DNA of 64,000 bases from Mytilus trossulus (Eukaryota), in contig NC_086381.1 in the NCBI RefSeq assembly GCF_036588685.1, forward strand, positions 27,714,001 through 27,778,000, in the 5' to 3' direction. A program made the translations under genes and the position numbers. Shown here piece after piece: positions 80 to 50,505 of the stretch. Each line of letters starts with the position of its first letter. Positions within the stretch are counted from its first letter, which is position 1. The notes under the pieces are model-generated. The model did not search any database, had not been told where the DNA came from, and worked only from the letters and a program-made list of their open reading frames with translations.

Positions 80-454
80 ATGCCACCAAAAGTTGGAACC
101 AAAGGAGCCAAAAAGGCCGTAACAAAGGCAAAGACTGCCAGACCCGGCGGTGACAAGAAAAGGAGGAGGAAGAGGAGAGAATCCTATGCCATCTACATCT
201 ACAAAGTCTTGAGACAGGTTCACCCAGACACTGGAGTATCCTCAAAGGCTATGTCTATCATGAACAGTTTTGTCAACGATATCTTTGAGAGAATCGCTGC
301 AGAAGCTTCCCGTCTCGCTCACTACAACAAGAGATCTACCATCACATCTCGGGAGATCCAGACTGCAGTTCGTCTGCTCTTACCCGGTGAATTGGCCAAG
401 CACGCTGTCAGTGAAGGTACCAAAGCCGTCACAAAGTACACCAGCAGCAAGTAA
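80..454 (+). CDS. H2B: Histone H2B
   Basis: 124 aa canonical H2B ([11 protein letters not shown]...KYTSSK), intronless, followed by stem-loop. Confidence 0.99.
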
Positions 455-480
455 ACAACGAGAAGTTTAACTTCACAAAC

Positions 481-1583: not shown

Positions 1584-3219
1584 CTATATATCTGATGAAC
1601 GCGGCCCTAAAAGAAATACCACTGAATTTTTGATAGGTTGGACCTGATTGGTTGTTTTCGTCTAAATCCGGGAGGTAACTCTGTAGGAATTCTGTACACT
1701 TTCAATCCACTTTTTGACTGAAGCTCTGAAAATATATGAAAATAAAATATTTCAAACTGTATACAAATAAAAATACAAAGATTATAAGAGATGGACCAAA
1801 TAACTAATGATCTCCATCATCAATTAATACTTCTTATATTTTCCAATGTGAAAGAGATTTATTTCCTTTTACTTAAAATACAAGAACATATCACACTGCA
1901 TACATAAGCAGGAGTTAACAATGTGCAATTGCAATATAAAAACAATTAGTTTAAAGAAAATCTTTTTATACAGTATTTTTCTTGTTCAAAAGATACAGTT
2001 TCAGAGATAGTCCACTCTGCAGACTTAAGAGAGTAAAAGAGTAAAAACTAAACTACAGCATACCAGTCAGTTATTTAAGCATGGACAGATAGATTTGTAA
2101 ATAAAAACAGGTGTGCATGATAATTTTTCTCAAAATCACCTTTACCAGTTTCAATAAAGATGTCCCGGGAAATTCACATTTCAAACATGTTATTATTACA
2201 TGTATACAATCAATGCTCATCTTTTAACAACTAATTAGGAATCTTTCTAAATTTAGCAGCTACTTTATACATGTAGTCATAGGTTTTTGAAATGTACACA
2301 GTGCAGCCTCACTTTTTAAATACCACAATTGGTACATCATTGAATGAATGAATTATTGCGCCTTGTCTATTTTTCTCCACCAATGGGAAAAAAAGATTCA
2401 TCCGCACACATGTTCACATCATTTATAAGGCACATAGAGCACCCAAAATAGATGCATTTTAAGCACAAAATAAAGGTATTCAAGAAAAACTTCTTTCTGT
2501 AACACACAATTGATGGAGACAAAGTTTTCAATGAGAATTTAAGGTGGACTACTTGGACCCGTACCGAAAATATATTTCAGAAATATAAAATAATTGATTC
2601 TTCTCATGTTGTCACAGTAGAATACACAATATGAGTAAAAAATACATAAAAAAAGCATCTAAAAAATAAGTGAGAAAATAAGACCGAGAAAAATGCAATT
2701 TAGAGAAAAATATAACCACAGAAATTAGAAAGAAATACATTTTAATAATTCTGTAATTAGAAGATGGATTGTATTGTTCTTGGAGTATGTTTTTTCTTAC
2801 CTTTTTTTTATTTAAATGTATACATGTATGTTAATTTTTTCAGGAGGGTATACCAGAAAATGTATAACATTCTTGTTTTTTCCGAAGGATTTGGAAGAAT
2901 TAGATAAATAAAAAATATGTATGTCTCTCTATCTCTATTTATCCTTTTATTTCTCTTCTTTGCATGTTATGAAATAAGTTTCTCTATATTTTTCTTCTAT
3001 CAATACAGTAACCCGACTTGTCTAATCTTAAGTGAGTGCAAAAAAAAAAGATAATAAGAAAGAAGAATAAAGAGAGATGTGGAGAGAAAGAAGAATAAAG
3101 AAAGATGTGGAGAGGGGGTTTCAGCTATATTTGATTTTGATGTACAACATATTCAGACTCTTTTTGGAAAATATTGGTGGCCCTTAAAAGGGCCGTTATT
3201 GTATAGAGTAAAGGTCAGT

Positions 3220-3684
<465 letters not shown>

Positions 3685-4116
3685 TCAAATGTTAGTGTAT
3701 TTGTGCTAGCCGCAATGTTTGCAAACACGACACTGATTGGCCTTTCGGGGTAATAAAACTCACGTTGATTGGTTGAAATCTCTGTGTTATGATTGGACTG
3801 ATCTGGAAGTTACTTTCACAGCTTTCGATCCCTTTTTGGACTGAAGCTATGATTGTTCACCCCAAGCTAACAATTGGCACAATTTGTTTCTATTCTGATA
3901 GTGTCAGCGAAAATTTGACATAAGACCAAAAAAAATAATAATCAAGAGTAATGCAGAACTTAATAATAATCTTTATTCAAATAATAAATAATTGTTTAAT
4001 CAACAGTCTGACACGAAATTAATAATTGACAGGAAATGTAAATTAAAGAGCAAAATAGAAGAAGAAAAAAGAGAAAAAAAACATCATCCATCCATTTTCA
4101 TCAATAGCCAGTGGTA

Positions 4117-4216
4117 NNNNNNNNNNNNNNNNNNNNNNNNNNNNNNNNNNNNNNNNNNNNNNNNNNNNNNNNNNNNNNNNNNNNNNNNNNNNNNNNNNNN
4201 NNNNNNNNNNNNNNNN
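4117..4216. other. Assembly gap (100 N)
   Basis: Run of N; array orientation flips across it. Confidence 0.99.
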
Positions 4217-4308
4217 TTCCTCCTCCTTTTCTTGTCACCGCCGGGTCTGGCAGTCTTTGCCTTTGTTACGGCCTTTTTGGCTCCTTTGGTTCCAACTTTT
4301 GGTGGCAT
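4217..4308 (-). CDS. H2B: Histone H2B, 5' part only (cut by gap)
   Basis: MPPKVGTK...KKRRR then N run. Confidence 0.9.
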
Positions 4309-4970
<662 letters not shown>

Positions 4971-5000
4971 AGTCAACACTACAGAAACTTCACTTACAAC

Positions 5001-5053
5001 GGCCCTTTTCAGGGCCACCAACATTTTTCAAAAAGAATCTGACTTTGTTGTAC
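5001..5053 (+). terminator. H2A stem-loop (5001-5016), HDE-like element and TGTTGTAC (representative)
   Basis: GGCCCTTTTCAGGGCC ACCAA ... CAAAAAGAATCT ... TGTTGTAC. Confidence 0.95.
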
Positions 5054-6134
5054 AATTTAGTTGAATGCAGAAAGCAATCTCAAACATAGCTCACTCCCTC
5101 CATTTCTCTTGTCTTTATCTCTTTATTTTTCCTTTTCTTTATAAACAGCATACAGATGTCTACTTTCTAATTATATATATAACAATATTTGATGTGGAAA
5201 AAAAATGAAGAACAGTACGAGTTTCTTTTTTTCCCCTATAAAAGTCCAAGAAAATAAACGAACTATATAACGTAGATTCGATGAAAATGCGCAAGCACGA
5301 GAGGAAGAAAAACTCATAGTTGTTAGTGGTCAATGTTGCATATTTTTTTGGTGTAAATTAAGTTGCAGTCCTATATATTATACTATATAAGCACACACAA
5401 TACAATCTATGACCTTATTTTTATATAATATATATTCGTTCGTTCGTTGTCTGTCTAACTGTGATCTATGTGAATTCTTTTCTTCCTCTTCTGCTGTCAC
5501 ATTCTCTTAGATATATAATATATATTTTGTGTTCCTATACAAAGTACTTATGCGTATGTTTATAGTTGTGTAGATTATTTTTTAGCTCAAATCCTTTGTA
5601 TTTGCAAAATTCGTATATAAACAATAAAGAATACTTCAACAATGTGCAAGTTTCACAGTATGCGTGCAGTATACTATATAGAGAATATCATGGCTTTACA
5701 TGATACAGAGACTAGAGAATACAGAGACTGTATAGCTAGAGAGAACACAAAGACTATAGAGAGGATAAAAAGTGTTCTCTTTGTTTTAAGACACTGAGAC
5801 GAGTGACAATTGTGTACTATAGTAAGCATGTCTATACGAGAAACTAAGAAAACGGCTGCATTTCTATACCACTGGCTATTGATGAAAATGGATGGATGAT
5901 GTTTTTTTTCTCTTTTTTCTTCTTCTATTTTGCTCTTTAATTTACATTTCCTGTCAATTATTAATTTCGTGTCAGACTGTTGATTAAACAATTATTTATT
6001 ATTTGAATAAAGATTATTATTAAGTTCTGCATTACTCTTGATTATTATTTTTTTTGGTCTTATGTCAAATTTTCGCTGACACTATCAGAATAGAAACAAA
6101 TTGTGCCAATTGTTAGCTTGGGGTGAACAATCAT

Positions 6135-6763
<629 letters not shown>

Positions 6764-6788
6764 ACTGACCTTTACTCTATACAATAAC

Positions 6789-6841
6789 GGCCCTTTTAAG
6801 GGCCACCAATATTTTCCAAAAAGAGTCTGAATATGTTGTAC
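6789..6841 (+). terminator. H3 stem-loop (6789-6804), HDE-like element and TGTTGTAC (representative)
   Basis: GGCCCTTTTAAGGGCC ACCAA ... CAAAAAGAGTCT. Confidence 0.95.
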
Positions 6842-6868
6842 ATCAAAATCAAATATAGCTGAAACCCC

Positions 6869-6924
6869 CTCTCCACATCTTTCTTTATTCTTCTTTCTCT
6901 CCACATCTCTCTTTATTCTTCTTT
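6869..6924 (+). repeat. 28-bp pyrimidine-rich tandem duplication downstream of H3 (representative copy)
   Basis: CTCTCCACATCT(T/C)TCTTTATTCTTCTTT x2. Confidence 0.85.
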
Positions 6925-8257
6925 CTTATTATCTTTTTTTTTTGCACTCACTTAAGATTAGACAAGTCGGGTTACTGTATTGATAGAAGAAAAATATAGA
7001 GAAACTTATTTCATAACATGCAAAGAAGAGAAATAAAAGGATAAATAGAGATAGAGAGACATACATATTTTTTATTTATCTAATTCTTCCAAATCCTTCG
7101 GAAAAAACAAGAATGTTATACATTTTCTGGTATACCCTCCTGAAAAAATTAACATACATGTATACATTTAAATAAAAAAAAGGTAAGAAAAAACATACTC
7201 CAAGAACAATACAATCCATCTTCTAATTACAGAATTATTAAAATGTATTTCTTTCTAATTTCTGTGGTTATATTTTTCTCTAAATTGCATTTTTCTCGGT
7301 CTTATTTTCTCACTTATTTTTTAGATGCTTTTTTTATGTATTTTTTACTCATATTGTGTATTCTACTGTGACAACATGAGAAGAATCAATTATTTTATAT
7401 TTCTGAAATATATTTTCGGTACGGGTCCAAGTAGTCCACCTTAAATTCTCATTGAAAACTTTGTCTCCATCAATTGTGTGTTACAGAAAGAAGTTTTTCT
7501 TGAATACCTTTATTTTGTGCTTAAAATGCATCTATTTTGGGTGCTCTATGTGCCTTATAAATGATGTGAACATGTGTGCGGATGAATCTTTTTTTCCCAT
7601 TGGTGGAGAAAAATAGACAAGGCGCAATAATTCATTCATTCAATGATGTACCAATTGTGGTATTTAAAAAGTGAGGCTGCACTGTGTACATTTCAAAAAC
7701 CTATGACTACATGTATAAAGTAGCTGCTAAATTTAGAAAGATTCCTAATTAGTTGTTAAAAGATGAGCATTGATTGTATACATGTAATAATAACATGTTT
7801 GAAATGTGAATTTCCCGGGACATCTTTATTGAAACTGGTAAAGGTGATTTTGAGAAAAATTATCATGCACACCTGTTTTTATTTACAAATCTATCTGTCC
7901 ATGCTTAAATAACTGACTGGTATGCTGTAGTTTAGTTTTTACTCTTTTACTCTCTTAAGTCTGCAGAGTGGACTATCTCTGAAACTGTATCTTTTGAACA
8001 AGAAAAATACTGTATAAAAAGATTTTCTTTAAACTAATTGTTTTTATATTGCAATTGCACATTGTTAACTCCTGCTTATGTATGCAGTGTGATATGTTCT
8101 TGTATTTTAAGTAAAAGGAAATAAATCTCTTTCACATTGGAAAATATAAGAAGTATTAATTGATGATGGAGATCATTAGTTATTTGGTCCATCTCTTATA
8201 ATCTTTGTATTTTTATTTGTATACAGTTTGAAATATTTTATTTTCATATATTTTCAG

Positions 8258-25545: not shown

Positions 25546-26308
25546 ACAGCCAGCTGAAAAATACAAATACAACGGCCCTTTTCAGGGCCACCAACATATT
25601 TCAAAAAGAATCTGCCTTTGTTGTACTTAAAATGAAAACCATAGCTTTCTCCTGTCCAACTTTCTTTACTTTCCTTTTTCTTTTATTCGTTTATTTTTTT
25701 TAATTTCTTTTCACTTTTTTTATTTAAGCCTATTAAAAAAAGACCAGCAAGACTTTGGATACAATATGATTCCTGATTTTTTTAATGTAAATAAAATTAT
25801 TCTTTATTTCATATATATTCTTTTATGTAAAAGATATATTGCTGAATTTTTCTCCATTGTCAAACTCTAGTTATATTGTTTTTATATCCTAAAACAATCC
25901 CCCTCCCCCTTTTTTCTCTCTGTCGACGTATGTGTGAATTTAATCTGTTCGTGATATTTTTTTATATAATGTTTCAATACATATTCAAGTATAGTTCGAT
26001 TCTAGACCCCCTCCCCCCCCCAAAAAAAAGAGGGAAGAAATGTATAACCCGTGAAAAGGTTAAATTCTGGTGTATGTATATTTTTTCAAATCGGCTAATA
26101 AAATGAAGAATAAAGAAGAGAAAAAAAGAAAGAAAGAAAGAAAGAAAGAAAGACAAAAAGACAGAATTCAGATATAAACAAATTTGTCATTTTGGGGTGG
26201 GACACAGCTTCATTTAGAAGTTTGTTATGTACAACAATAATAAGACTCTTTTTGAAAAATATTGGTGGCCCTGAAAAGGGCCGTTTGTGAAGTTAAACTT
26301 CTCGTTGT

Positions 26309-26662
26309 TTACTTGCTGCTGGTGTACTTTGTGACGGCTTTGGTACCTTCACTGACAGCGTGCTTGGCCAATTCACCGGGTAAGAGCAGACGAACTGCAG
26401 TCTGGATCTCCCGAGATGTGATGGTAGATCTCTTGTTGTAGTGAGCGAGACGGGAAGCTTCTGCAGCGATTCTCTCAAAGATATCGTTGACAAAACTGTT
26501 CATGATAGACATAGCCTTTGAGGATACTCCAGTGTCTCTTTGTAGATGTAGATGGCATAGGATTCTCTCCTCTTCCTCCTCCTTTTCTTGTCACCGCCGG
26601 GTCTGGCAGTCTTTGCTTTGTTACGGCCTTTTTGGCTCCTTTGGTTCCAACTTTTGTGGCAT
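26309..26662 (-). pseudogene. H2B: Frameshifted H2B (pseudogene or contig-end sequencing error)
   Basis: 19-bp deletion near 26537 plus two 1-bp deletions in the CDS; more 1-bp deletions in the promoter; lies ~250 bp from an N gap. Confidence 0.55.
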
Positions 26663-26910: not shown

Positions 26911-27010
26911 NNNNNNNNNNNNNNNNNNNNNNNNNNNNNNNNNNNNNNNNNNNNNNNNNNNNNNNNNNNNNNNNNNNNNNNNNNNNNNNNNNNNNNNNNN
27001 NNNNNNNNNN
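26911..27010. other. Assembly gap (100 N)
   Basis: Run of N; orientation flips. Confidence 0.99.
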
Positions 27011-35773: not shown

Positions 35774-36157
<384 letters not shown>

Positions 36158-36435
36158 TTAATACGTTGTTTGACTTGAACAAGTATAAACAATGATTATC
36201 CAGTTAGGTGGTATTTTACTATTTATACCCGCAAAACGGATTGAAAGATGTTTCAGTTCTAAACCAATCAAATCATCGCTTCTTCCAGGTAGTTAGGGTT
36301 GAATGTTAGAAGGGTGCTCTCTCCGAAGTTCGCGTTAAGTAAAAACTTTCAATCCGTTTAGCCGAGTATAAATAGAAATTTTTATTAACGGCCATCATTC
36401 ACTGATTACATTTCAGAGAGTATACATCTTTCAAA

Positions 36436-36810
36436 ATGCCACCAAAAGTTGGAACCAAAGGAGCCAAAAAGGCCGTAACAAAGGCAAAGACTGCCAGACC
36501 CGGCGGTGACAAGAAAAGGAGGAGGAAGAGGAGAGAATCCTATGCCATCTACATCTACAAAGTCTTGAGACAGGTTCACCCAGACACTGGAGTATCCTCA
36601 AAGGCTATGTCTATCATGAACAGTTTTGTCAACGATATCTTTGAGAGAATCGCTGCAGAAGCTTCCCGTCTCGCTCACTACAACAAGAGATCTACCATCA
36701 CATCTCGGGAGATCCAGACTGCAGTTCGTCTGCTCTTACCCGGTGAATTGGCCAAGCACGCTGTCAGTGAAGGTACCAAAGCCGTCACAAAGTACACCAG
36801 CAGCAAGTAA
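36436..36810 (+). CDS. H2B: Histone H2B
   Basis: Canonical 124 aa. Confidence 0.99.
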
Positions 36811-37573
36811 ACAACGAGAAGTTTAACTTCACAAACGGCCCTTTTCAGGGCCACCAATATTTTTCAAAAAGAGTCTTATTATTGTTGTACATAACAAACT
36901 TCTAAATGAAGCTGTGTCCCACCCCAAAATGACAAATTTGTTTATATCTGAATTCTGTCTTTTTGTCTTTCTTTCTTTCTTTCTTTCTTTCTTTTTTTCT
37001 CTTCTTTATTCTTCATTTTATTAGCCGATTTGAAAAAATATACATACACCAGAATTTAACCTTTTCACGGGTTATACATTTCTTCCCTCTTTTTTTTGGG
37101 GGGGGGAGGGGGTCTAGAATCGAACTATACTTGAATATGTATTGAAACATTATATAAAAAAATATCACGAACAGATTAAATTCACACATACGTCGACAGA
37201 GAGAAAAAAGGGGGAGGGGGATTGTTTTAGGATATAAAAACAATATAACTAGAGTTTGACAATGGAGAAAAATTCAGCAATATATCTTTTACATAAAAGA
37301 ATATATATGAAATAAAGAATAATTTTATTTACATTAAAAAAATCAGGAATCATATTGTATCCAAAGTCTTGCTGGTCTTTTTTTAATAGGCTTAAATAAA
37401 AAAAGTGAAAAGAAATTAAAAAAAATAAACGAATAAAAGAAAAAGGAAAGTAAAGAAAGTTGGACAGGAGAAAGCTATGGTTTTCATTTTAAGTACAACA
37501 AAGGCAGATTCTTTTTGAAATATGTTGGTGGCCCTGAAAAGGGCCGTTGTATTTGTATTTTTCAGCTGGCTGT

Positions 37574-37939
<366 letters not shown>

Positions 37940-39575
37940 CTATATATCTGATGAACGCGGCCCTAAAAGAAATACCACTGAATTTTTGATAGGTTGGACC
38001 TGATTGGTTGTTTTCGTCTAAATCCGGGAGGTAACTCTGTAGGAATTCTGTACACTTTCAATCCACTTTTTGACTGAAGCTCTGAAAATATATGAAAATA
38101 AAATATTTCAAACTGTATACAAATAAAAATACAAAGATTATAAGAGATGGACCAAATAACTAATGATCTCCATCATCAATTAATACTTCTTATATTTTCC
38201 AATGTGAAAGAGATTTATTTCCTTTTACTTAAAATACAAGAACATATCACACTGCATACATAAGCAGGAGTTAACAATGTGCAATTGCAATATAAAAACA
38301 ATTAGTTTAAAGAAAATCTTTTTATACAGTATTTTTCTTGTTCAAAAGATACAGTTTCAGAGATAGTCCACTCTGCAGACTTAAGAGAGTAAAAGAGTAA
38401 AAACTAAACTACAGCATACCAGTCAGTTATTTAAGCATGGACAGATAGATTTGTAAATAAAAACAGGTGTGCATGATAATTTTTCTCAAAATCACCTTTA
38501 CCAGTTTCAATAAAGATGTCCCGGGAAATTCACATTTCAAACATGTTATTATTACATGTATACAATCAATGCTCATCTTTTAACAACTAATTAGGAATCT
38601 TTCTAAATTTAGCAGCTACTTTATACATGTAGTCATAGGTTTTTGAAATGTACACAGTGCAGCCTCACTTTTTAAATACCACAATTGGTACATCATTGAA
38701 TGAATGAATTATTGCGCCTTGTCTATTTTTCTCCACCAATGGGAAAAAAAGATTCATCCGCACACATGTTCACATCATTTATAAGGCACATAGAGCACCC
38801 AAAATAGATGCATTTTAAGCACAAAATAAAGGTATTCAAGAAAAACTTCTTTCTGTAACACACAATTGATGGAGACAAAGTTTTCAATGAGAATTTAAGG
38901 TGGACTACTTGGACCCGTACCGAAAATATATTTCAGAAATATAAAATAATTGATTCTTCTCATGTTGTCACAGTAGAATACACAATATGAGTAAAAAATA
39001 CATAAAAAAAGCATCTAAAAAATAAGTGAGAAAATAAGACCGAGAAAAATGCAATTTAGAGAAAAATATAACCACAGAAATTAGAAAGAAATACATTTTA
39101 ATAATTCTGTAATTAGAAGATGGATTGTATTGTTCTTGGAGTATGTTTTTTCTTACCTTTTTTTTATTTAAATGTATACATGTATGTTAATTTTTTCAGG
39201 AGGGTATACCAGAAAATGTATAACATTCTTGTTTTTTCCGAAGGATTTGGAAGAATTAGATAAATAAAAAATATGTATGTCTCTCTATCTCTATTTATCC
39301 TTTTATTTCTCTTCTTTGCATGTTATGAAATAAGTTTCTCTATATTTTTCTTCTATCAATACAGTAACCCGACTTGTCTAATCTTAAGTGAGTGCAAAAA
39401 AAAAAGATAATAAGAAAGAAGAATAAAGAGAGATGTGGAGAGAAAGAAGAATAAAGAAAGATGTGGAGAGGGGGTTTCAGCTATATTTGATTTTGATGTA
39501 CAACATATTCAGACTCTTTTTGGAAAATATTGGTGGCCCTTAAAAGGGCCGTTATTGTATAGAGTAAAGGTCAGT

Positions 39576-40040
<465 letters not shown>

Positions 40041-41368
40041 TCAAATGTTAGTGTATTTGTGCTAGCCGCAATGTTTGCAAACACGACACTGATTGGCCTT
40101 TCGGGGTAATAAAACTCACGTTGATTGGTTGAAATCTCTGTGTTATGATTGGACTGATCTGGAAGTTACTTTCACAGCTTTCGATCCCTTTTTGGACTGA
40201 AGCTATGATTGTTCACCCCAAGCTAACAATTGGCACAATTTGTTTCTATTCTGATAGTGTCAGCGAAAATTTGACATAAGACCAAAAAAAATAATAATCA
40301 AGAGTAATGCAGAACTTAATAATAATCTTTATTCAAATAATAAATAATTGTTTAATCAACAGTCTGACACGAAATTAATAATTGACAGGAAATGTAAATT
40401 AAAGAGCAAAATAGAAGAAGAAAAAAGAGAAAAAAAACATCATCCATCCATTTTCATCAATAGCCAGTGGTATAGAAATGCAGCCGTTTTCTTAGTTTCT
40501 CGTATAGACATGCTTACTATAGTACACAATTGTCACTCGTCTCAGTGTCTTAAAACAAAGAGAACACTTTTTATCCTCTCTATAGTCTTTGTGTTCTCTC
40601 TAGCTATACAGTCTCTGTATTCTCTAGTCTCTGTATCATGTAAAGCCATGATATTCTCTATATAGTATACTGCACGCATACTGTGAAACTTGCACATTGT
40701 TGAAGTATTCTTTATTGTTTATATACGAATTTTGCAAATACAAAGGATTTGAGCTAAAAAATAATCTACACAACTATAAACATACGCATAAGTACTTTGT
40801 ATAGGAACACAAAATATATATTATATATCTAAGAGAATGTGACAGCAGAAGAGGAAGAAAAGAATTCACATAGATCACAGTTAGACAGACAACGAACGAA
40901 CGAATATATATTATATAAAAATAAGGTCATAGATTGTATTGTGTGTGCTTATATAGTATAATATATAGGACTGCAACTTAATTTACACCAAAAAAATATG
41001 CAACATTGACCACTAACAACTATGAGTTTTTCTTCCTCTCGTGCTTGCGCATTTTCATCGAATCTACGTTATATAGTTCGTTTATTTTCTTGGACTTTTA
41101 TAGGGGAAAAAAAGAAACTCGTACTGTTCTTCATTTTTTTTCCACATCAAATATTGTTATATATATAATTAGAAAGTAGACATCTGTATGCTGTTTATAA
41201 AGAAAAGGAAAAATAAAGAGATAAAGACAAGAGAAATGGAGGGAGTGAGCTATGTTTGAGATTGCTTTCTGCATTCAACTAAATTGTACAACAAAGTCAG
41301 ATTCTTTTTGAAAAATGTTGGTGGCCCTGAAAAGGGCCGTTGTAAGTGAAGTTTCTGTAGTGTTGACT

Positions 41369-41752
<384 letters not shown>

Positions 41753-41789: not shown

Positions 41790-41799
41790 ATTATCCAGT
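41790..41799 (+). repeat. Target site duplication, left copy (ATTATCCAGT)
   Basis: Identical to 49127-49136; single copy in empty units (e.g. 30600-30609). Confidence 0.95.
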
Positions 41800-41820
41800 C
41801 AACAAATGGAAGTTTTTAAC

Positions 41821-41853
41821 GACCTTGACTGGCTATACAGCCCTTGCACGGTC
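41821..41853 (-). other. Putative 3'-terminal RNA stem-loop of the LINE
   Basis: RNA GACC-G-UG-CAAG-GGCU-GUAU-AGCC-AGU-CA-A-GGUC, 21 nt from the 3' end; folded by eye. Confidence 0.55.
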
Positions 41854-42173
41854 GGCCCTGGCTTGCGCCTTTTTGGGCATTAAATAATTTATATTTTTAC
41901 CATGTGGTAATTTAAATAATTTAGAATAATAAGAAAGTTTAATAAAAACAAAAAATTTAAAAAGCAAAAATTTGGATAAATAAATGAATAAAAAAAAAAA
42001 AGTTTTAAGATTAGGTAAATAATAAAATAATAAAAAAATAATAAAAGAATATAAAAATAAATATAATAAAATAATATAGAAATAATTTTGTATAAAAATA
42101 AAAATAAAATAAAACAAAATAAATAAATAATTATTAAACACGGAGCCACCGGAAGTAGGAACAGGAGGAAAGC

Positions 42174-42236
42174 TTGGCCAAGCAAACAGCAGTGTACGGC
42201 AGCAACGTTGTCCTGGTACACCAGCAGCCAAGTAAA
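42174..42236 (+). pseudogene. Diverged fragment of the H2B 3' coding end inside the LINE 3'UTR (antisense to the LINE RNA)
   Basis: TTGGCCAAGCA...CAGTG...GTACACCAGCAGC(C)AAGTAAA is collinear with H2B 392-455; ~50/66 identical columns by hand alignment. Confidence 0.75.
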
Positions 42237-42874
42237 GAGCGGATAATTTTGATATGCCAAATTGTGTATGTGAATTTATATGCCAAATATTATGTATAAA
42301 CCACAATAAGCCTAAATTTGTGAATGTGAGTTTTGCAAAAATATTTAGTGGGATGTTTTGTATGTACTAGAAAAATGAAAAGTGAAATAAAATAAAATAA
42401 AATAAATAAAAAACCAAAGGGTGTATGTAAATTTTGACTGCTTTGTGCTAGCCTACCGTAGTTGCAGGACTTTAGAGTGCTAGTACACTGGAACACTTAT
42501 CCGCAGGAAGACAGTGCCCCACGCTAATTAAAACTGGATTAGCGCAAACCAGATCTTGCGAAGTACCATTTTTTAAGTCTTAGATTTGACTTGCGGCTTA
42601 ATGACATGAAAAATTTATATAATGACCAAAAGTAGAAACAAAAATAATTTAGGGTGCCGCGAATTTGGAAGAAAAAAACCAAAGGTTATCGTGCGTTCTT
42701 GTTTAGTTAGCATAATTCTAATAGTTTAATTAACTTATCCCTACATTCTTTTTATTTAATTCTAAATATGTTAAGTTATTTTAAATGATTAATTTTTATT
42801 ATTTTTTTTTAATTTTTTTTTTTTTTTAATCATATTTAATTTGGATTTTATTTGTCTTAAAGATTTAGTTTTTT

Positions 42875-43405
42875 ACTGCCGGTTATGGCCTGACTCCATT
42901 TCTGAGTCACTGACCGGATAACTCTTGCAGTATGTTTTGCCCCTTTAATGATGCTGTGGTAAGTCGTCTTGAAGATCCATCTGTACTGCCGGTTATGGCC
43001 TGACTCCATTTCTGAGTCACTGACCCCGGATAACTCTTGCAGAGTAGTTGGTCTTCTTAACGATCTTTTCTAGTAAGTACGTACTGTATTTGTATTGAAG
43101 ATTTGATTTTTACTGCCGGTTACGGCCTGACTCCATTTCTGAGTCACTGACCTGGATAACTCTTGCAGTGTGTTTTGCCTATTTAAAGATGTTGTGGTAA
43201 GTCGTCTTGAAGAGCCTTCTGTACTGCCGGTTATGGCCTGACTCCATTTCTGAGTCACTGACCCCGGATAACTCTTGCAGCGTAGCTGGTCTTCTTAACG
43301 ATCTTTTCTTTAGTACGTACTGTATTTGAAGTGAAGATTTAGTTTTTGACTGCCGGTTACGGCCTGACTCCATTTCTGAGTCACTGACCCGGATAACTCT
43401 TGCAG
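42875..43405. repeat. 3'UTR repeat array: five 56-58-bp cores with alternating spacers (A-B-A-B)
   Basis: Cores at 42875-42930, 42985-43042, 43112-43168, 43223-43280, 43349-43405; periods 110/127/111/126. Confidence 0.95.
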
Positions 43406-43454
43406 TGTATTTTAATTATTTTATTTCTATGACTGTTTTTTTATATATATATAC

Positions 43455-46400
43455 TTATATAAATTTATGATAATCAATTTCTGTTAAATATTGTACCAAG
43501 CACGACCAGACATATTGTTGTTTGTCTTTAGGAGGATCTAGTAATATTTTGGTATTAATATTTTGTATTTGAACCTTGTCCAAGTTTGATTGCAAATTTT
43601 GTCTCGCTTGTGAATGATTAATACAGTTTACTAGTACGTGTTCTATATCCTCTTTAATGCCGCATGTATTGCATATTGGTGAGACATTGCGTATGTACTG
43701 GCCTAGTTGCCCAGGTAATAAAGTAGTGCCCAACCTAAGTCTAGTTATTGTTTTTGCATGAAATCGATTACCTTGATAAAAGTTGGGTTTTTTATTTACT
43801 GCAGTATTTATAGAACGACTCCATATGGAGCATGTGTTATCCCATCTAGCTTGCCACTTTTTCTTATATAATGCTGTTGTTATTGCAATGAATTCGTTTG
43901 CACTAAGACTCAAGTTAAGGTCAATCTTATCATTACTTAGTGCTAATTTAGCTAGTTTGTCAACCTGTTCATTACCTAGGATACCAACATGCGCTGGTAT
44001 CCATTCTATGGTTACTTCTATATTTTTTTGTTTTAGACGACAAGCCAGTATTTGAATTGGTTCTAGGATATCGGGTCTACTTGATGCATTATTATTTATA
44101 GATTGGATTGCACTATATGAATCAGTTAGAATAACAACTTTTTGCCCTGGCTGTTGATTGGAGAATACCCACTTTAATGATTGATATATGGCCGTCATTT
44201 CTGTGGTGTACACGGAAAGATTGTCTGACGTTCGTTTATAGCTTGCAATCAACTTTGATGGGATTAGAAAAGCATATCCAGTTTTACCCGAAGCTGGGTC
44301 TTTTGAGCCATCGGTGTAAATTTTTAAATGATTTTTATATGCATTGTCGATGTACTCTAACGCTTTAGTCTTAATGATATGCGGATTTTCTTTTTTACTG
44401 AGGCTGTTTTTTATGTTACTGGATGTTTTTGCTTGACCTATTATCCATGGAGGTGGATCTTGAATATTTTTAGTAACCAACTTTATTTTGTCTAGTTCGT
44501 TATCTTTAAGTAGATTTTGGACTCTGAATCCGTAAGGTATGTTATGGTCATTCCATTTATGATTATAAATTTGATATTCAATACAGTCATCTACTAGTTC
44601 ATTGGCTGGATTTGATGGATTTTGTTTAGTACGAGCATAATATTTAAGAGAAAGGTGGTCCCTTCTTAATTGTAATGGCATTTCGCCAGACTCGGCTAGT
44701 ATTGTTTCTAACGGGGTCGATTTATGGGCCCCTAACACTATGCGAAGAGCTTTAGCTTGTATTATATCTAATTTAGATTTTACAGTTATAGATGCTGAAT
44801 TAAACGCTTGACATCCATAGTCAAGTACCGATCTAAGAAGAGATTTATATAGCATGAGAAGAGAATCAGTACCCATGCCATAATTATTTGCTTGAACATA
44901 CCTTAGAACGTTTAATATTGCTTTAGATCTTTCTAGTAAATAGTTTACGTGTTTATTCCATGTTAGCTTTCTATCAAATATGAGACCAAGAAACTTGACA
45001 TGATTCTGGAATTTGATTGGTTCGTTATCTAGCATTAGGTTAACTGAATAAACATGACGATCTCCAAATATTACTCCTATCGTTTTGGTTTTAGATATCT
45101 TAAAACCCCATTTTTTAGACCATGCACTTATATTATTAAGGGTTTCTTGCATTTTTTTTGTTAAGTGTTTAATATTTCCACCTCGGTACCACATTGCACT
45201 GTCGTCAGCAAATTGTGACATAACTGCGGGTTTTTTTGCCAGACCTACTAGATCATTAATCATGATGTTAAATAATGTGGGACTGATGACACTACCTTGC
45301 GGGATACCATTGTTTAGATCATATTCGTCTGAGGATTCTTGATTTACTTTAACTTGAATTTTTCTATCTTGCAGAAAGTCTTTTATGAAGTTAAATAATC
45401 TCCCATTTATACCGTAATCTTTGCACTTTTTTAATAGACCAAAACGCCATACTAAGTCAAATGCCTTTTCAATATCGAGAAATATGGCTAGTAGAAATTG
45501 TTTACGAACTTTAGCTTTTTTAATGTCTGTCTCAAGTCGCAGTAAGTGGTCTAATGTGGAGCGACCTTCACGGAACCCACTTTGTGTTTCATTTATTATA
45601 TTTTTCTCCGTTAGAAGATGTTTAAGTCTAACATTAACCATGCTTTCCATTAGTTTACAAAAATTTGATGTAAGAGAAATCGGTCTGTAGGATTTAGGGT
45701 CAGATTTATTTTTATTAGGTTTTAGTATAGGGATTACATTTGCATGTTTCCAGCTGTGGGGAAGTTGACCAGTTACCCACACTTTATTTATTAATTGTAA
45801 CATAATATCGATCATACTTTCAGGCATATGCTTGAACATTTCATATGTTATACGGTCATCACCGGGCGCAGTTGTCTTTTTGGTCTTAAGCACCTTATAA
45901 AGTTCGTTTTTGTTGAATGGTATATTAAATTTTGACCTATTATGTTGCTCATCATCATCCCTATTAATCGGATTTTCTATTTCGGTTTTTAATTTATGAG
46001 TTCTGAATTTGGGATCTAAGTTATTGTCACTGGATGCTTCTGCAAAAGTTCCGGCGAGCATGTTTGCTTTATCTACATTAGATACCGCTTGTTTGGTGTC
46101 ATTAATAAGTGTAGGTAGGGAGGATGATTTTGCCCCTTTAAGACCTTTAACTGTGTTCCAAACTGTTTTTACGTTAGTTTTATAGTTTAGTTTGTCACAG
46201 AAATTTTGCCAGTAGTCAGTTTTTGCCTTATCTGTGACACGTTTAAACTCCTTGACTGCAGTTTTATATAATTCATGATTTTCTTCTGATTTTGATTTAT
46301 CATATACCCTATGTTTATGACGCTTATTTTTTTTGGCATTCGTACAATTATCGTTCCACCAGGGACAGTTTTTTCTTGTATGTATAGTACCACTAGTTTT

Positions 46401-47273
46401 GGGGATTGTTTCATCTGCGATTTTAGTCACCACTTCACAAAGATTTTGATTAAAGATTTCAATATCGTCATGTTTTATATTATCTATATTTATTTCGTTA
46501 CAAAGGGTAGTGAACCTGTGCCAGTCGGCTTTATCGTACACCCACCTTTGTGGAGTGCAGACTTTATTTTTAACCGGTTTTGCATTTAACACGGTGAGTA
46601 CTGGGAAGTGATCAGAACCTAGTTGCTCATCTAAAACTGACCATTGACTGTCATTGGCTAACGATGCGGAGACTAATGTTAGATCTATTTGTGTTCGGTT
46701 GCCTGTTACAGTTTGATATGTTCCTGTACCGTCGTTTAAAATTATCATGTTATTTTGGTCTATGACTTTTTCAATTATGTTACCATTGCTATCTGTTGTG
46801 CTAGACCCCCACATCGAGGATCTACTATTAAAATCTCCAAGTAGCACTATATTATCTGATAAGTTATGCAAAACTTCTTGATATTCATCAAATTTAATAT
46901 TTTGACTAGGGGGTCTATACACATTAACTATATTTATCTTATTATTTTGACAGTTTACAGATACGCCTACTACTTCTATGTTATCAGTATTAAAATTAAG
47001 TTGTGAAAAATTAACTTGAATCGAAACATAAATTGCTACTCCTCCTCCTATTTGAGGTTTCTTTTTATTTTTACCTTTAGGTTGAATCGGTGTCTTTCTA
47101 TTTCGAATGATTGGTGGGTGGTAGCCTTGTAGTTTTATGTACCTATTATCTTTAAAACGAGTTTCTTGTACACAAATAATTTCTGGGTTATTATGTGTGT
47201 CTAAGTAATGTTTGAGGGAATTTGCGTTCGCATAAAGTGATCGCGCATTCCACTGTAAAATGTGTAGCCCCAT
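43455..47273 (-). CDS. LINE ORF2: APE endonuclease - reverse transcriptase - RNase H - C-terminal CCHC (1272 aa)
   Basis: APE: QWNARSL, CVQET, NVYRPP, GDFN, IDLTL, SDHFP; RT: YRPISLTS, QSGFR, LDIEKAFD, GIPQGSVISP, FADD, KFLG; RNase H: YTDGSK, TEMTAI, LTDS, WIPAHVGILGNEQVD; CNTC..H..C. Confidence 0.98.
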   Translation of the reverse strand: MGLHILQWNARSLYANANSLKHYLDTHNNPEIICVQETRFKDNRYIKLQGYHPPIIRNRKTPIQPKGKNKKKPQIGGGVAIYVSIQVNFSQLNFNTDNIEVVGVSVNCQNNKINIVNVYRPPSQNIKFDEYQEVLHNLSDNIVLLGDFNSRSSMWGSSTTDSNGNIIEKVIDQNNMIILNDGTGTYQTVTGNRTQIDLTLVSASLANDSQWSVLDEQLGSDHFPVLTVLNAKPVKNKVCTPQRWVYDKADWHRFTTLCNEINIDNIKHDDIEIFNQNLCEVVTKIADETIPKTSGTIHTRKNCPWWNDNCTNAKKNKRHKHRVYDKSKSEENHELYKTAVKEFKRVTDKAKTDYWQNFCDKLNYKTNVKTVWNTVKGLKGAKSSSLPTLINDTKQAVSNVDKANMLAGTFAEASSDNNLDPKFRTHKLKTEIENPINRDDDEQHNRSKFNIPFNKNELYKVLKTKKTTAPGDDRITYEMFKHMPESMIDIMLQLINKVWVTGQLPHSWKHANVIPILKPNKNKSDPKSYRPISLTSNFCKLMESMVNVRLKHLLTEKNIINETQSGFREGRSTLDHLLRLETDIKKAKVRKQFLLAIFLDIEKAFDLVWRFGLLKKCKDYGINGRLFNFIKDFLQDRKIQVKVNQESSDEYDLNNGIPQGSVISPTLFNIMINDLVGLAKKPAVMSQFADDSAMWYRGGNIKHLTKKMQETLNNISAWSKKWGFKISKTKTIGVIFGDRHVYSVNLMLDNEPIKFQNHVKFLGLIFDRKLTWNKHVNYLLERSKAILNVLRYVQANNYGMGTDSLLMLYKSLLRSVLDYGCQAFNSASITVKSKLDIIQAKALRIVLGAHKSTPLETILAESGEMPLQLRRDHLSLKYYARTKQNPSNPANELVDDCIEYQIYNHKWNDHNIPYGFRVQNLLKDNELDKIKLVTKNIQDPPPWIIGQAKTSSNIKNSLSKKENPHIIKTKALEYIDNAYKNHLKIYTDGSKDPASGKTGYAFLIPSKLIASYKRTSDNLSVYTTEMTAIYQSLKWVFSNQQPGQKVVILTDSYSAIQSINNNASSRPDILEPIQILACRLKQKNIEVTIEWIPAHVGILGNEQVDKLAKLALSNDKIDLNLSLSANEFIAITTALYKKKWQARWDNTCSIWSRSINTAVNKKPNFYQGNRFHAKTITRLRLGTTLLPGQLGQYIRNVSPICNTCGIKEDIEHVLVNCINHSQARQNLQSNLDKVQIQNINTKILLDPPKDKQQYVWSCLVQYLTEIDYHKFI

Positions 47274-47317
47274 TACGGTTAATTAATTATTTAAATTAAT
47301 TGTTGCTTATATTATCT

Positions 47318-48778
47318 TTAAATGACGTCAACTGTTATTTCTTTACCAAATTGCTCGCTGACAAATTTTTGAAAGAGTCTCATGATGGGAACAGAGATAT
47401 CCCCATGTTTGTCTGCTATATGCCGTATCTCTGTGATTAGGTTTTCCCAGTTTTTTAAATCACTAACGTCTTGACTTGATGGTTCAATTATAGTTTTGCG
47501 GATCTCTGAAATATTTTTTCTATCTTTATTAGGAATAATGGGGGTTTGATCTTCTATTTGTGTATTCTCTGTTTCAATATTTAAATTTTTATCTACGCTT
47601 ATTTCCGGATTATCTACCGGTGCCATAGTGGCTTCATTATCGCTAATTATATCCGTGTCATTGTTAATTACTTTAGATTTAACACTGTCAGCGTATGATT
47701 TACCAGGTGTGACATTTGATGTGCTAATTATTTTAGGTATGGTTTCATCATCTGACACTGGGGAGCTAATTATTTTAGGTATGGTTTCACATTTTTGTTG
47801 TGCCTTTTGTTTAGCTTGGTCAAATGACATTTTATGACTATACATATTTTCCAACACCTGTTTTTGGAATATATATTTGGGGCATGATTTATCTATTGCC
47901 TGATGTTTACCTCCACAGTTGTTACATTTTAAATTTTTTCCATTACAGTTTTTGGTTGCATGTTTACCAGCACATTTAATGCACGTATTAATAGATTTTC
48001 TGCATTGTTTGGCATAATGTCCTAGACTTGCGCATTTAGTACAGAATTTAGGGTTAGGTTTATATGGCAGTAAATCATACTCTATGTTTTGTCCCTGATT
48101 GTTTAAGGGAATAGATTTAAGAATTGAGTCTCTTTCTGATAACGTTACTAATAGATAACCAGCTTTACCTAATTGTTTTACAATTTTTATATCTGCCCCT
48201 GTTTGCCTTAGCATATTTTCCTGCTTTTTAATATTAAGAATTTCAGTATCAACAGGTTTAGGTATAACTTTATAGACTCTATTTTTAGTAACCTTATTTT
48301 CGTTAATTTCCTTTGTAGCAGCTGCTTGAATAGTTATTTTCTGCTTATGGTCAGTATCAAATTTAGACACTTTTATTTGGAAATTACCCAGTTTAGTCAG
48401 GCCTAGTAACTTTCTTTTTATGGTTTCAGATGGTGCGTAAACCAGCACACTGTTTTTAAGTGGTTTTATTTCTATAGCTTGATCATTAACACTTCCTATC
48501 ATGGTTATTAGCAGATAATGGAGAGAGTTAAGGGTCAGAAGCATGAACTTTTTTGCCCTTGATGTTATGATTAGTGTTTCACTAGGGGGAAACATTTTTT
48601 TGCCCTTATCATTGAGTGACACAGGGCTTTTATTTTTGGTTTGGCTTGATTCTTGCCTTTTTGGATATTGTATTGGCGAATTGCCTTGACTTTGTTTGTA
48701 AATTTTGGAATCAGGTGATTCCCCTTGTTGTGGACTTGTTGAGTCGATTTTCCTTTTGTTGTTTGTCATATTGTTCAT
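47318..48778 (-). CDS. LINE ORF1, gag-like nucleic-acid-binding protein (486 aa)
   Basis: Three knuckles CX2CX4HX4C, CX2CX3HX4C, CX2CX3HX6C; ends 44 bp upstream of ORF2. Confidence 0.95.
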   Translation of the reverse strand: MNNMTNNKRKIDSTSPQQGESPDSKIYKQSQGNSPIQYPKRQESSQTKNKSPVSLNDKGKKMFPPSETLIITSRAKKFMLLTLNSLHYLLITMIGSVNDQAIEIKPLKNSVLVYAPSETIKRKLLGLTKLGNFQIKVSKFDTDHKQKITIQAAATKEINENKVTKNRVYKVIPKPVDTEILNIKKQENMLRQTGADIKIVKQLGKAGYLLVTLSERDSILKSIPLNNQGQNIEYDLLPYKPNPKFCTKCASLGHYAKQCRKSINTCIKCAGKHATKNCNGKNLKCNNCGGKHQAIDKSCPKYIFQKQVLENMYSHKMSFDQAKQKAQQKCETIPKIISSPVSDDETIPKIISTSNVTPGKSYADSVKSKVINNDTDIISDNEATMAPVDNPEISVDKNLNIETENTQIEDQTPIIPNKDRKNISEIRKTIIEPSSQDVSDLKNWENLITEIRHIADKHGDISVPIMRLFQKFVSEQFGKEITVDVI

Positions 48779-49091
48779 ATTTAATATATCTTAACTTTTA
48801 ATTAAATTTATTAAAGCAAAAATAGATGAAACTTTAGCCAATTTAAATATTTAATACTTATTTAGCAAAAATATTAAATTATTTAAACTTATTTAGCAAA
48901 AACAAAGTTTAAAACCTAAAGATTAAAAAAAAATTAATTTATGAACTTACAAAGAAATAATAAAAAGAAGTGAAATTGAACTTAAGTAAAAAATAAAAAT
49001 AAAAATTATTTTAAATGCTAACTAAACAATTTAACAAAAAATAAACAACAGACCGTAATCTTCTCCTGTAATTGCTTTGAGATCGACGCGT

Positions 49092-49126
49092 ACGTGTTGA
49101 CTCGACGACGGCAAGCTAAGGAGTGA
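49092..49126 (-). promoter_or_regulatory. LINE internal Pol II promoter: Inr TCACTCC plus DPE ACACGT
   Basis: With A49124 as +1, G lies at +24 and ACACGT at +28..+33, matching DPE consensus DSWYVY at the canonical spacing. Confidence 0.65.
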
Positions 49127-49136
49127 ATTATCCAGT
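49127..49136 (+). repeat. Target site duplication, right copy (ATTATCCAGT)
   Basis: Identical to 41790-41799. Confidence 0.95.
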
Positions 49137-49367: not shown

Positions 49368-49742
49368 ATGCCACCAAAAGTTGGAACCAAAGGAGCCAAA
49401 AAGGCCGTAACAAAGGCAAAGACTGCCAGACCCGGCGGTGACAAGAAAAGGAGGAGGAAGAGGAGAGAATCCTATGCCATCTACATCTACAAAGTCTTGA
49501 GACAGGTTCACCCAGACACTGGAGTATCCTCAAAGGCTATGTCTATCATGAACAGTTTTGTCAACGATATCTTTGAGAGAATCGCTGCAGAAGCTTCCCG
49601 TCTCGCTCACTACAACAAGAGATCTACCATCACATCTCGGGAGATCCAGACTGCAGTTCGTCTGCTCTTACCCGGTGAATTGGCCAAGCACGCTGTCAGT
49701 GAAGGTACCAAAGCCGTCACAAAGTACACCAGCAGCAAGTAA
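49368..49742 (+). CDS. H2B: Histone H2B
   Basis: Canonical 124 aa. Confidence 0.99.
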
Positions 49743-50505
49743 ACAACGAGAAGTTTAACTTCACAAACGGCCCTTTTCAGGGCCACCAATATTTTTCAAA
49801 AAGAGTCTTATTATTGTTGTACATAACAAACTTCTAAATGAAGCTGTGTCCCACCCCAAAATGACAAATTTGTTTATATCTGAATTCTGTCTTTTTGTCT
49901 TTCTTTCTTTCTTTCTTTCTTTCTTTTTTTCTCTTCTTTATTCTTCATTTTATTAGCCGATTTGAAAAAATATACATACACCAGAATTTAACCTTTTCAC
50001 GGGTTATACATTTCTTCCCTCTTTTTTTTGGGGGGGGGAGGGGGTCTAGAATCGAACTATACTTGAATATGTATTGAAACATTATATAAAAAAATATCAC
50101 GAACAGATTAAATTCACACATACGTCGACAGAGAGAAAAAAGGGGGAGGGGGATTGTTTTAGGATATAAAAACAATATAACTAGAGTTTGACAATGGAGA
50201 AAAATTCAGCAATATATCTTTTACATAAAAGAATATATATGAAATAAAGAATAATTTTATTTACATTAAAAAAATCAGGAATCATATTGTATCCAAAGTC
50301 TTGCTGGTCTTTTTTTAATAGGCTTAAATAAAAAAAGTGAAAAGAAATTAAAAAAAATAAACGAATAAAAGAAAAAGGAAAGTAAAGAAAGTTGGACAGG
50401 AGAAAGCTATGGTTTTCATTTTAAGTACAACAAAGGCAGATTCTTTTTGAAATATGTTGGTGGCCCTGAAAAGGGCCGTTGTATTTGTATTTTTCAGCTG
50501 GCTGT

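What the first reader, a model, noticed from the sequence alone, without database searches (positions are those of the whole stretch)
42174..42236. LINE 3'UTR carries a diverged antisense copy of the H2B C-terminal coding end and stop codon
Seen: element TTGGCCAAGCA-AACAGCAGTGTACGGCAGCAACGTTGTCCTG-GTACACCAGCAGC-C-AAGTAAA versus H2B (392-455) TTGGCCAAGCA-CGCTGTCAGTGAAGGTACCAAAGCCGTCACAAA-GTACACCAGCAGC-AAGTAAA. There are exact blocks of 11, 13 and 7 nt at collinear spacing (42 vs 44 nt), about 75% identity by hand. It lies in a GC island between A-rich tracts, ~400 nt inside the element, so it is not a junction artefact. The divergence implies it is much older than this insertion, suggesting the lineage met histone genes before. 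Inference: because the LINE RNA is minus strand, UUUACUU(G)GCUGCUGGUGUAC can pair with H2B mRNA just upstream of the SLBP stem-loop. It could tether the RNP to nascent H2B RNA from the same divergent promoter (homing), or lower H2B to offset the lost H2A copy. It could also be a neutral relic of template switching.
Basis: partly seen in the sequence, partly recalled or inferred. Interest (0 to 1): 0.88.

Follow-up and report, generated by a model that had tools for sequence, protein, structure and literature searches.

The report
Decayed antisense H2B relic in mussel LINE
A young jumping gene (LINE) sitting in a mussel histone gene array really does carry, in its tail, a worn-down backwards copy of the host histone H2B coding sequence. 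It looks like an old passenger fragment, not a device for finding or regulating histone genes.

Summary
Window 42174-42236 aligns to the last 64 nt of H2B at 50/66 identity. The local score is 43, against 23 +/- 2.2 for shuffles (0/500) and at most 32 in 216 kb of real genome.

The block belongs to the 1655-nt 3'UTR of a Mytilus LINE family (APE-RT-RNaseH, minus strand, 10-bp target-site duplication). All copies examined carry it, down to 78-86% identity, except a few with local deletions, so it predates this insertion.

New here: the 23 nt at 42145-42167, just upstream in the same GC island, resemble the first codons of H2B, most closely in older copies. The island therefore looks like an internally deleted, antisense mini-H2B.

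The functional ideas are not supported:
- About 40 other copies have no core-histone DNA nearby.
- One copy lies at an H1 gene start site, and H1 has no H2B tail.
- An unrelated LINE without the block is inserted at the very same nucleotide there.
- The block is no better conserved than neighbouring UTR.
- It has no significant fold and no Rfam match.
- Its predicted duplex with H2A or H4 mRNA is about as strong as with H2B.

Best reading: a neutral, decaying relic of an old H2B capture. Its antisense orientation argues against a simple template switch onto H2B mRNA.

The parts
41800..49126 (-). Full-length LINE insertion (7327 bp) in the H2A-H2B divergent intergenic region
   Evidence: Comparison with the intact intergenic region 36100-36500 gives exact breakpoints. 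ORF2 has APE, RT and RNase H domains. ORF1 has one CCHC knuckle.
41790..41799 (.). Target-site duplication, 3'-side copy (10 bp)
   Evidence: Intact positions 36195-36204 are present on both sides of the insert.
49127..49136 (.). Target-site duplication, 5'-side copy (10 bp)
   Evidence: junctions printed.
43455..47273 (-). ORF2, 1272 aa, open
   Evidence: It is 86-96% identical to Mytilus edulis and M. coruscus proteins.
47318..48778 (-). ORF1, 486 aa, open
   Evidence: No Pfam hit. One CCHC motif.
41800..43454 (-). LINE 3'UTR (1655 nt), no poly(A), ends ...CCATTTGTTG
   Evidence: At least 55 matches in the window's own genome at 78-98% identity, several spanning positions 1-1655. The terminus is the same in all copies.
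42145..42167 (+). Part of the GC island that resembles the first codons of H2B (window 82-107), antisense to the LINE
   Evidence: Score 22 in young copies (about 30-40 of 1000 shuffles reach it). Score 27-33 in several older copies (0-5 of 1000). The best match is at the same H2B place in most copies.
42174..42236 (+). The reported block: H2B C-terminal codons plus stop (window 392-455), antisense to the LINE
42237..42250 (+). Weak continuation of the alignment into the first nucleotides of the H2B 3'UTR; no stem-loop
   Evidence: The local alignment runs on to 42250 at about 60% identity.
80..455 (+). Reference H2B gene used for the comparisons; 9 further full-length copies plus a 92-nt fragment at an assembly gap (4217-4308) lie in the window, the nearest at 49368-49743
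41369..41746 (-). H2A gene whose ATG lies 53 nt downstream of the LINE 3' end, same orientation

Best explanation
The GC island at about 42143-42250 is a molecular fossil: host H2B coding sequence that an ancestor of this Mytilus LINE family took into its 3'UTR in antisense orientation. What survives is about 25-35 nt from the start of the H2B reading frame. It is joined, near a shared GGCC, to the last 64 nt of the frame plus the stop codon and a few bases of 3'UTR. The middle of the gene, about 280 nt, is gone.

Shown: the fragment has since been copied as a passenger with every retrotransposition, and it shows no sign of selective maintenance.

Inferred: it plays no part in choosing insertion sites or in controlling H2B. 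The family's landings next to histone genes reflect a property of the target, the stretch between the TATA box and the start site of very active tandem histone genes. That habit also explains how an ancestor had the opportunity to pick up H2B sequence. The route of capture is not shown. The antisense orientation and the presence of both ends of the reading frame favour capture of genomic or antisense read-through sequence from a copy resident in a histone array, followed by internal deletion.
For: - Non-random similarity of the 3' block.
- A second, collinear, same-strand similarity to the H2B start within the same island. Three independent older subfamily haplotypes each keep H2B-like states that young copies lack: an exact GCCACCAAAAGT in L035, L039 and L040, and GTGCC/TTGCC in eight copies.
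- The block is present in all copies examined, at every divergence level (down to 78-86%), apart from copies with local deletions (L010, L028).
- Identity of the block in old copies (0.87-0.92) matches that of neighbouring complex UTR (0.85-0.95).
- The run-length pattern is compatible with uniform decay (P 0.04-0.11).
- No structure (z 0.2) and no Rfam family.
- Other copies are dispersed, with unrelated flanks.
- The same insertion point in the H1 promoter is used by a LINE that has no block.
Against: - No relative from another species could be examined, so conservation of the block in the active lineage is untested.
- The 5' part is only marginally significant in young copies (P about 0.03). 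Its better match in older copies could partly reflect subfamily history that I cannot root.
- The mechanism of capture is conjecture.
- Two of roughly 45 loci lie at histone start sites, in the same orientation and the same register (8 nt upstream of ATCATTGT). That is more than chance would give, so some link between this family and histone loci exists, and I cannot prove that the block plays no part in it.
Confidence: 0.7

Rival explanations
1. Functional antisense element. The LINE RNA pairs with nascent or mature H2B RNA through the island. This would either concentrate the RNP at histone loci (the histone locus body), biasing insertion towards histone promoters, or damp H2B expression.
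For: - The complementarity is real, with 13+7 and 11-nt perfect runs.
- Duplex prediction with the H2B 3' end gives -74 kcal/mol against -47 +/- 4.7 for shuffles.
- The family has two independent insertions at histone gene start sites, in the core array and the H1 array.
Against: - The same LINE segment gives -71 kcal/mol with H2A mRNA and -66 with H4, so the energy reflects GC content rather than specificity.
- A LINE lacking any such block uses the identical H1 site.
- About 40 copies lie away from histone genes.
- There is no excess conservation.
- Changes seen in the young lineage reduce the match in the 5' part.
- The block predates the insertion, so it cannot be a response to it.
Confidence: 0.08
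2. Chance resemblance. The block is ordinary UTR sequence that happens to align with H2B, and was picked out because the reader was looking for histone-like strings.
For: - BLAST on its own finds only a 21-nt piece (E 0.003 to 0.02) and an 11-mer (E 1.4).
- The core CAGCAGC is low-complexity and is masked by DUST.
- The scan looked at very many windows.
- Older copies lack one base of the 11-mer.
Against: - The joint collinear score of 43-48 has P of about 1e-6 to 1e-7 for UTR against H2B, and about 1e-4 or less even for the whole LINE against the whole unit (my Karlin-Altschul estimate).
- Nothing comparable appears in 216 kb of real background.
- A second H2B-like stretch lies in the right order and on the right strand in the same island.
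Confidence: 0.07
3. An H2B-derived sequence that the LINE has since put to a use of its own unrelated to H2B, for example a protein-binding or RNA-processing site in the 3'UTR.
For: - The island is the only GC-rich patch in a very AT-rich stretch of about 600 nt, and all subfamilies retain it.
- It holds a 12-nt perfect palindrome, GCTTGGCCAAGC, in young copies.
Against: - No significant fold (z 0.2) and no Rfam match.
- The palindrome is absent from older copies, which read CTAGGCC.
- Two copies have lost the block by deletion, which says nothing about the master copy either way.
Confidence: 0.1

Closest known systems
Host-sequence capture by LINEs (L1 3' transduction; U6/L1 and mRNA/L1 template-switch chimeras)
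   Same: A non-LTR element carries a piece of unrelated host gene sequence that is then copied along with it.
   Different: Here the fragment is internal to the UTR (375 nt from the 3' end) and antisense. It is fixed in a whole active family rather than in single dead copies, and it consists of both ends of a reading frame with the middle missing. Simple template-switch chimeras are sense-to-sense and lie at the 5' side. No flanking duplication or poly(A) marks a nested retrocopy.
Target-complementary RNA ends of site-specific LINEs (R2 and R1Bm, which use read-through or 3' target sequence to anneal at the rDNA nick)
   Different: In those elements the homologous sequence lies at the very end of the RNA and matches the insertion site itself, and the elements are strictly site-specific. 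Here the block is internal, matches H2B coding sequence 300-700 nt away from the insertion point, and the family is dispersed.
Gene-fragment capture by DNA transposons (Pack-MULEs, Helitrons)
   Same: Decayed, often rearranged host gene fragments, sometimes antisense, carried as passengers by a transposon family.
   Different: Those are a different class of element with a different capture mechanism. No transcript or small-RNA evidence is available here.

Membership tests
Captured host-gene fragment carried by a retrotransposon family | Similarity to the host gene beyond chance | tested here: met
   Score 43-48 against shuffles of 23 +/- 2.2 (0/500). Real-genome background reaches at most 32.
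Captured host-gene fragment carried by a retrotransposon family | The fragment is part of the element, present in independent copies, and not flanking DNA of one insertion | tested here: met
   Present at the same UTR position in about 40 listed copies on many chromosomes, at 78-99% identity.
Captured host-gene fragment carried by a retrotransposon family | More than one part of the host gene, in collinear order on one strand | tested here: inconclusive
   The stretch resembling the H2B start lies 7 nt upstream of the block on the same strand. P is about 0.03 in young copies and 0.000-0.005 in several older ones.
Target-pairing guide of site-specific LINEs (R2/R1-like) | Insertions confined to one target sequence | tested here: not met
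   3' flanks of about 35 copies share no motif, and only two are at histone genes.
Target-pairing guide of site-specific LINEs (R2/R1-like) | The complementary sequence lies at the RNA terminus and matches the nicked site | tested here: not met
   The block is 375-437 nt from the 3' end. It matches the H2B coding end, not the insertion site in the H2A-H2B promoter or the H1 promoter.
Natural antisense or small-RNA regulator of H2B | Expressed antisense RNA or small RNAs that map to the block and act on H2B | not testable with these tools
Structured cis-element of a LINE 3'UTR | Fold more stable than shuffles, or a match to a known RNA family | tested here: not met
   z-score 0.20, with 110 of 200 shuffles folding at least as well. 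No Rfam match at E up to 1.

The most novel reading that the evidence does not exclude
The antisense mini-H2B is a tether. By pairing with abundant nascent H2B transcripts it would concentrate LINE RNPs in the histone locus body during S phase. That would explain why this otherwise dispersed family has landed at least twice just upstream of histone gene start sites. It would be an RNA-guided, compartment-level targeting mechanism for a retrotransposon.
Probability: 0.05. Interest if true: 0.85.

Novelty: new member of a known kind. Interest (0 to 1): 0.33.

Why it matters
The result shows that an apparently active mussel LINE family carries a datable trace of an earlier stay in the histone gene arrays. 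The same family, and unrelated LINEs, still hit those arrays at the gene start sites.

This ties a sequence fossil inside the element to an insertion hot spot in the host. It also gives a marker, the mini-H2B island, for following the family's history across mytilid mussels.

It does not provide evidence for RNA-guided homing or histone dosage control, so the striking functional reading should be set aside unless cross-species or RNA data revive it.

Tried and rejected
- **Whole LINE against whole histone unit, with shuffles.** Uninformative, because A-rich low-complexity tracts score 44 +/- 4, and 50 in the real data.
- **A-rich tract 131 nt downstream of the block against the H2B-H4 spacer.** Score 44, reached by 2/500 shuffles. 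Rejected as evidence of a longer genomic capture: the same spacer tract matches another A-rich part of the LINE even better, and the distances are not collinear.
- **Nested retrocopy of a polyadenylated H2B mRNA.** No stem-loop, no similarity of the intervening 130 nt to the H2B 3' flank, and no recognisable flanking duplication. Left open but unsupported.
- **ORFs 41833-42306 and 41889-42260 on the minus strand over the block.** Low-complexity F/L/I/Y translation, not a gene.
- **A more H2B-like source gene in the genome.** All 100 listed hits of a degenerate C-terminal pattern lie in the two core arrays and carry the same GGTACCAAAGCCGTC. The C6 array variant (ACTAAATAC) fits the block slightly worse than the C9 type.
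- **A diverged sister lineage of the LINE in this genome, to compare UTRs.** The hits to P0002 are the same family (98% DNA identity) or are only 35-38% identical in ORF2.
- **Cross-species test.** The metagenome scan returned only a 35% relative.
- **Codon-position pattern of mismatches.** Counted by eye; third positions are not significantly enriched.
- **Literature searches.** No report found of a histone fragment inside a LINE or of histone-targeting LINEs in mussels.

Full report
**Setting**

The window is a tandem array of core histone genes with a 5595-bp unit. It holds 10 full-length H2B copies plus a 92-nt fragment at an assembly gap. The genome is 1.3 Gb. It is a Mytilus mussel: ORF2 of the inserted element is 86-96% identical to proteins named from M. 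edulis and M. coruscus.

Comparing the disrupted H2A-H2B intergenic region with an intact one places the insertion exactly at 41800-49126 (7327 bp), flanked by a 10-bp target-site duplication at 41790-41799 and 49127-49136. The element lies on the minus strand.
- ORF1 is 486 aa with one CCHC knuckle.
- ORF2 is 1272 aa with apurinic-type endonuclease, reverse transcriptase and RNase H domains.
- The 3'UTR is 1655 nt and ends ...CCATTTGTTG without poly(A).

I did not determine the clade beyond this domain set.

**The observation**

The quoted strings are correct. Global alignment of 42174-42236 with H2B 392-455 gives 50/66 identities and 5 gap columns, with exact runs of 11, 13 and 7 nt and 42 vs 44 nt spacing.

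The significance tests agree:
- The best local score between the whole UTR (both strands) and 441 nt of H2B is 43.
- Whole-sequence shuffles, 100-nt block shuffles and shuffles of H2B, all dinucleotide-preserving, give 23 +/- 2.2 with a maximum of 37, and 0/500 reach 43. This null matches Karlin-Altschul expectation for the scoring scheme. My estimate from it is P of about 1e-6 for this search space and about 1e-4 for the whole LINE against the whole unit.
- In 216 kb of other sequence fetched from this genome, the only chunks scoring above 32 against H2B were true histone 3' ends (65) and copies of this block (33-53).
- Two complete LINEs against four histone genes on both strands gave 22-31, apart from this block.
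- Caveats: BLAST on its own reports two separate pieces. DUST masks the CAGCAGC core. The naive LINE-against-unit shuffle test is swamped by A-rich tracts.

I rate the observation confirmed.

**It is a family feature**

The 3'UTR has at least 55 matches in the window's own genome at 78-98% identity, several spanning the whole 1655 nt. The 121-nt island alone has 61 candidate places, of which 40 were scored, all at 86-100%.

In an alignment of 39 copies the block sits at the same UTR position in every one, except two with local deletions. The block is therefore much older than the insertion in this window.

The window copy has a private change. Most copies read CAGTGAACGG, which matches H2B better, so typical copies score 48. 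Many of the more diverged copies read CTAGGCC rather than CTTGGCC, so the exact 11-mer may be partly a later coincidence.

**The island is more than the reported block**

The 23 nt at 42145-42167, in the same island, on the same strand and upstream of the block, find their best match in H2B at 82-107. That is immediately after the ATG at position 80.
- In young copies this is weak: score 22, reached by about 30-40 of 1000 shuffles.
- In several older copies it is clear: scores 27-33, reached by 0-5 of 1000 shuffles. The match falls at the same H2B place in most copies.
- Copies L035, L039 and L040 have an exact GCCACCAAAAGT.
- Eight copies at 86-95% have CCACCAGAAGT, most of them preceded by GTG or TTG where H2B has ATG.
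- Young copies have GAGCCACCGGAAGT.

These states are shared within subfamilies, so they are inherited rather than parallel decay. I could not root the subfamilies, so the direction of change is only suggested.

Taken together, the island reads as H2B codons 1 to about 9-12 joined to the last 21 codons plus the stop. The join lies near a GGCC that occurs in both parts of H2B. The island is thus an internally deleted mini-H2B, antisense to the LINE. Downstream of the stop the alignment continues weakly for about 15-25 nt, and there is no histone stem-loop.

**Tests of function**

*Homing.*
- None of the other roughly 40 loci has core-histone DNA within 1.5 kb.
- The 3' flanks of about 35 copies share no motif.
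- One 5'-truncated copy does lie in a histone array. It is the H1-only array on another chromosome (unit 2342 bp), and its 3' end is 66 nt upstream of the H1 ATG, in the gene's orientation. H1 has no H2B tail.
- A different LINE is inserted at the very same bond, GGTGAT|TTTTGCAT. It has an ORF2 of 1283 aa that is only about 36% identical to this lineage, and an (AAT)n tail. Its best scores against H2B, H2A, H3, H4 and H1 are 22-31, from AT-rich junk.
- An earlier follow-up in this scan (s1-829897) reached the same view of a hot spot between the TATA box and the start site that several LINE families use.

The hot spot is therefore best attributed to the target, not the block.

*Conservation.* In older copies the block is 0.87-0.92 identical to the window copy. 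Neighbouring complex UTR is 0.85-0.95, and only the AT-rich tracts are lower. The distribution of matches along the block is compatible with uniform decay (P 0.04-0.11).

*Pairing energy.* The LINE-sense segment gives -74 kcal/mol with the H2B 3' end, against -47 +/- 4.7 for shuffles. It also gives -71 with H2A mRNA and -66 with H4, so this is GC stickiness and not specificity.

*Structure.* The z-score is 0.20 and there is no Rfam match.

*Dosage.* The genome has 151 H2B copies and the block predates the insertion, so compensation for one disturbed H2A is not a coherent reading.

**Mechanism of acquisition (inference only)**

A reverse transcriptase that switches from LINE RNA to H2B mRNA would give a sense-to-sense chimera. 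The antisense orientation therefore needs either an antisense H2B template or a DNA-level event.

H2B is the only gene on its strand in the unit, and H4 converges on it. A LINE resident in the array and reading towards H2B, or a read-through transcript that ended in a second, truncated LINE copy, could deliver antisense H2B between LINE sequences. Internal deletion at the GGCC microhomology would then leave the two ends.

I found no supporting flank homology. The A-rich match to the H2B-H4 spacer is not credible, because that spacer tract matches other A-rich LINE regions even better.

**Not done**

Copies were compared one by one.

**Verdict**

This is a real, old, family-wide antisense relic of H2B, and probably of both ends of its reading frame, inside an apparently active Mytilus LINE.
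- Neutral passenger: 0.7.
- Functional pairing or tethering: 0.08.
- A use by the LINE unrelated to H2B: 0.1.
- Chance: 0.07.

It is a new example of a known kind of event (host-sequence capture by a transposon). It is of moderate interest, mainly because it fits the family's recurrent landings at histone gene start sites.

Noticed in passing
L052 (G000:C1:4965000-4974999) 2484-7288; L054 (G000:C1:4937500-4947400): A 5'-truncated copy of the window's LINE and a full-length unrelated LINE (ORF2 1283 aa, about 36% identical to this lineage, (AAT)n tail) are inserted at the same bond, GGTGAT|TTTTGCAT, 66 nt upstream of the H1 ATG, both in the gene's orientation. In both the H1 site and the window's H2A site the junction lies 8 nt upstream of ATCATTGT, probably the initiator. 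This is an insertion hot spot at histone start sites.
   Followed up: partly
L052 1-2483 and 7289-10000: Across the H1-array LINE copy the array phase steps back by 517 bp. This is either a 517-bp target duplication or, equally possible in a tandem array, an 1825-bp target deletion.
   Followed up: partly
window 26308-26662 (-): One H2B copy next to the assembly gap at 26911-27010 has a 19-nt deletion and two single-base deletions. It is a pseudogene or an assembly error.
   Followed up: partly
G000:C6:33.65-34.10 Mb and G000:C9:27.63 Mb onwards: There are two separate core-histone arrays, with 151 H2B copies in total. Each is internally homogeneous but fixed for different synonymous codons near the H2B C-terminus (ACTAAATAC vs ACAAAGTAC). 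Both contain several orientation flips and irregular spacings.
   Followed up: no
L044-L047 (four chromosomes): Four loci hold the same internal LINE fragment (element positions 3185-4910, 98% identity) with identical boundaries. This suggests the fragment is now part of another, composite repeat.
   Followed up: no
L028 (G000:C7:26915402-26919088); L009: L028 carries three copies of the LINE 3' terminus, each followed by TTGATTGAT, a local rearrangement or tandem duplication of the tail. L009 and L028 share similar downstream flanks, so both lie in another repeat.
   Followed up: no
window 36825-36891, 37493-37551, 39497-39553, 41289-41346; L052 293-349: A conserved cassette of about 55 nt (stem-loop plus downstream element) is shared at 85-90% identity by the 3' ends of all four core histone genes and the H1 gene.
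   Followed up: no
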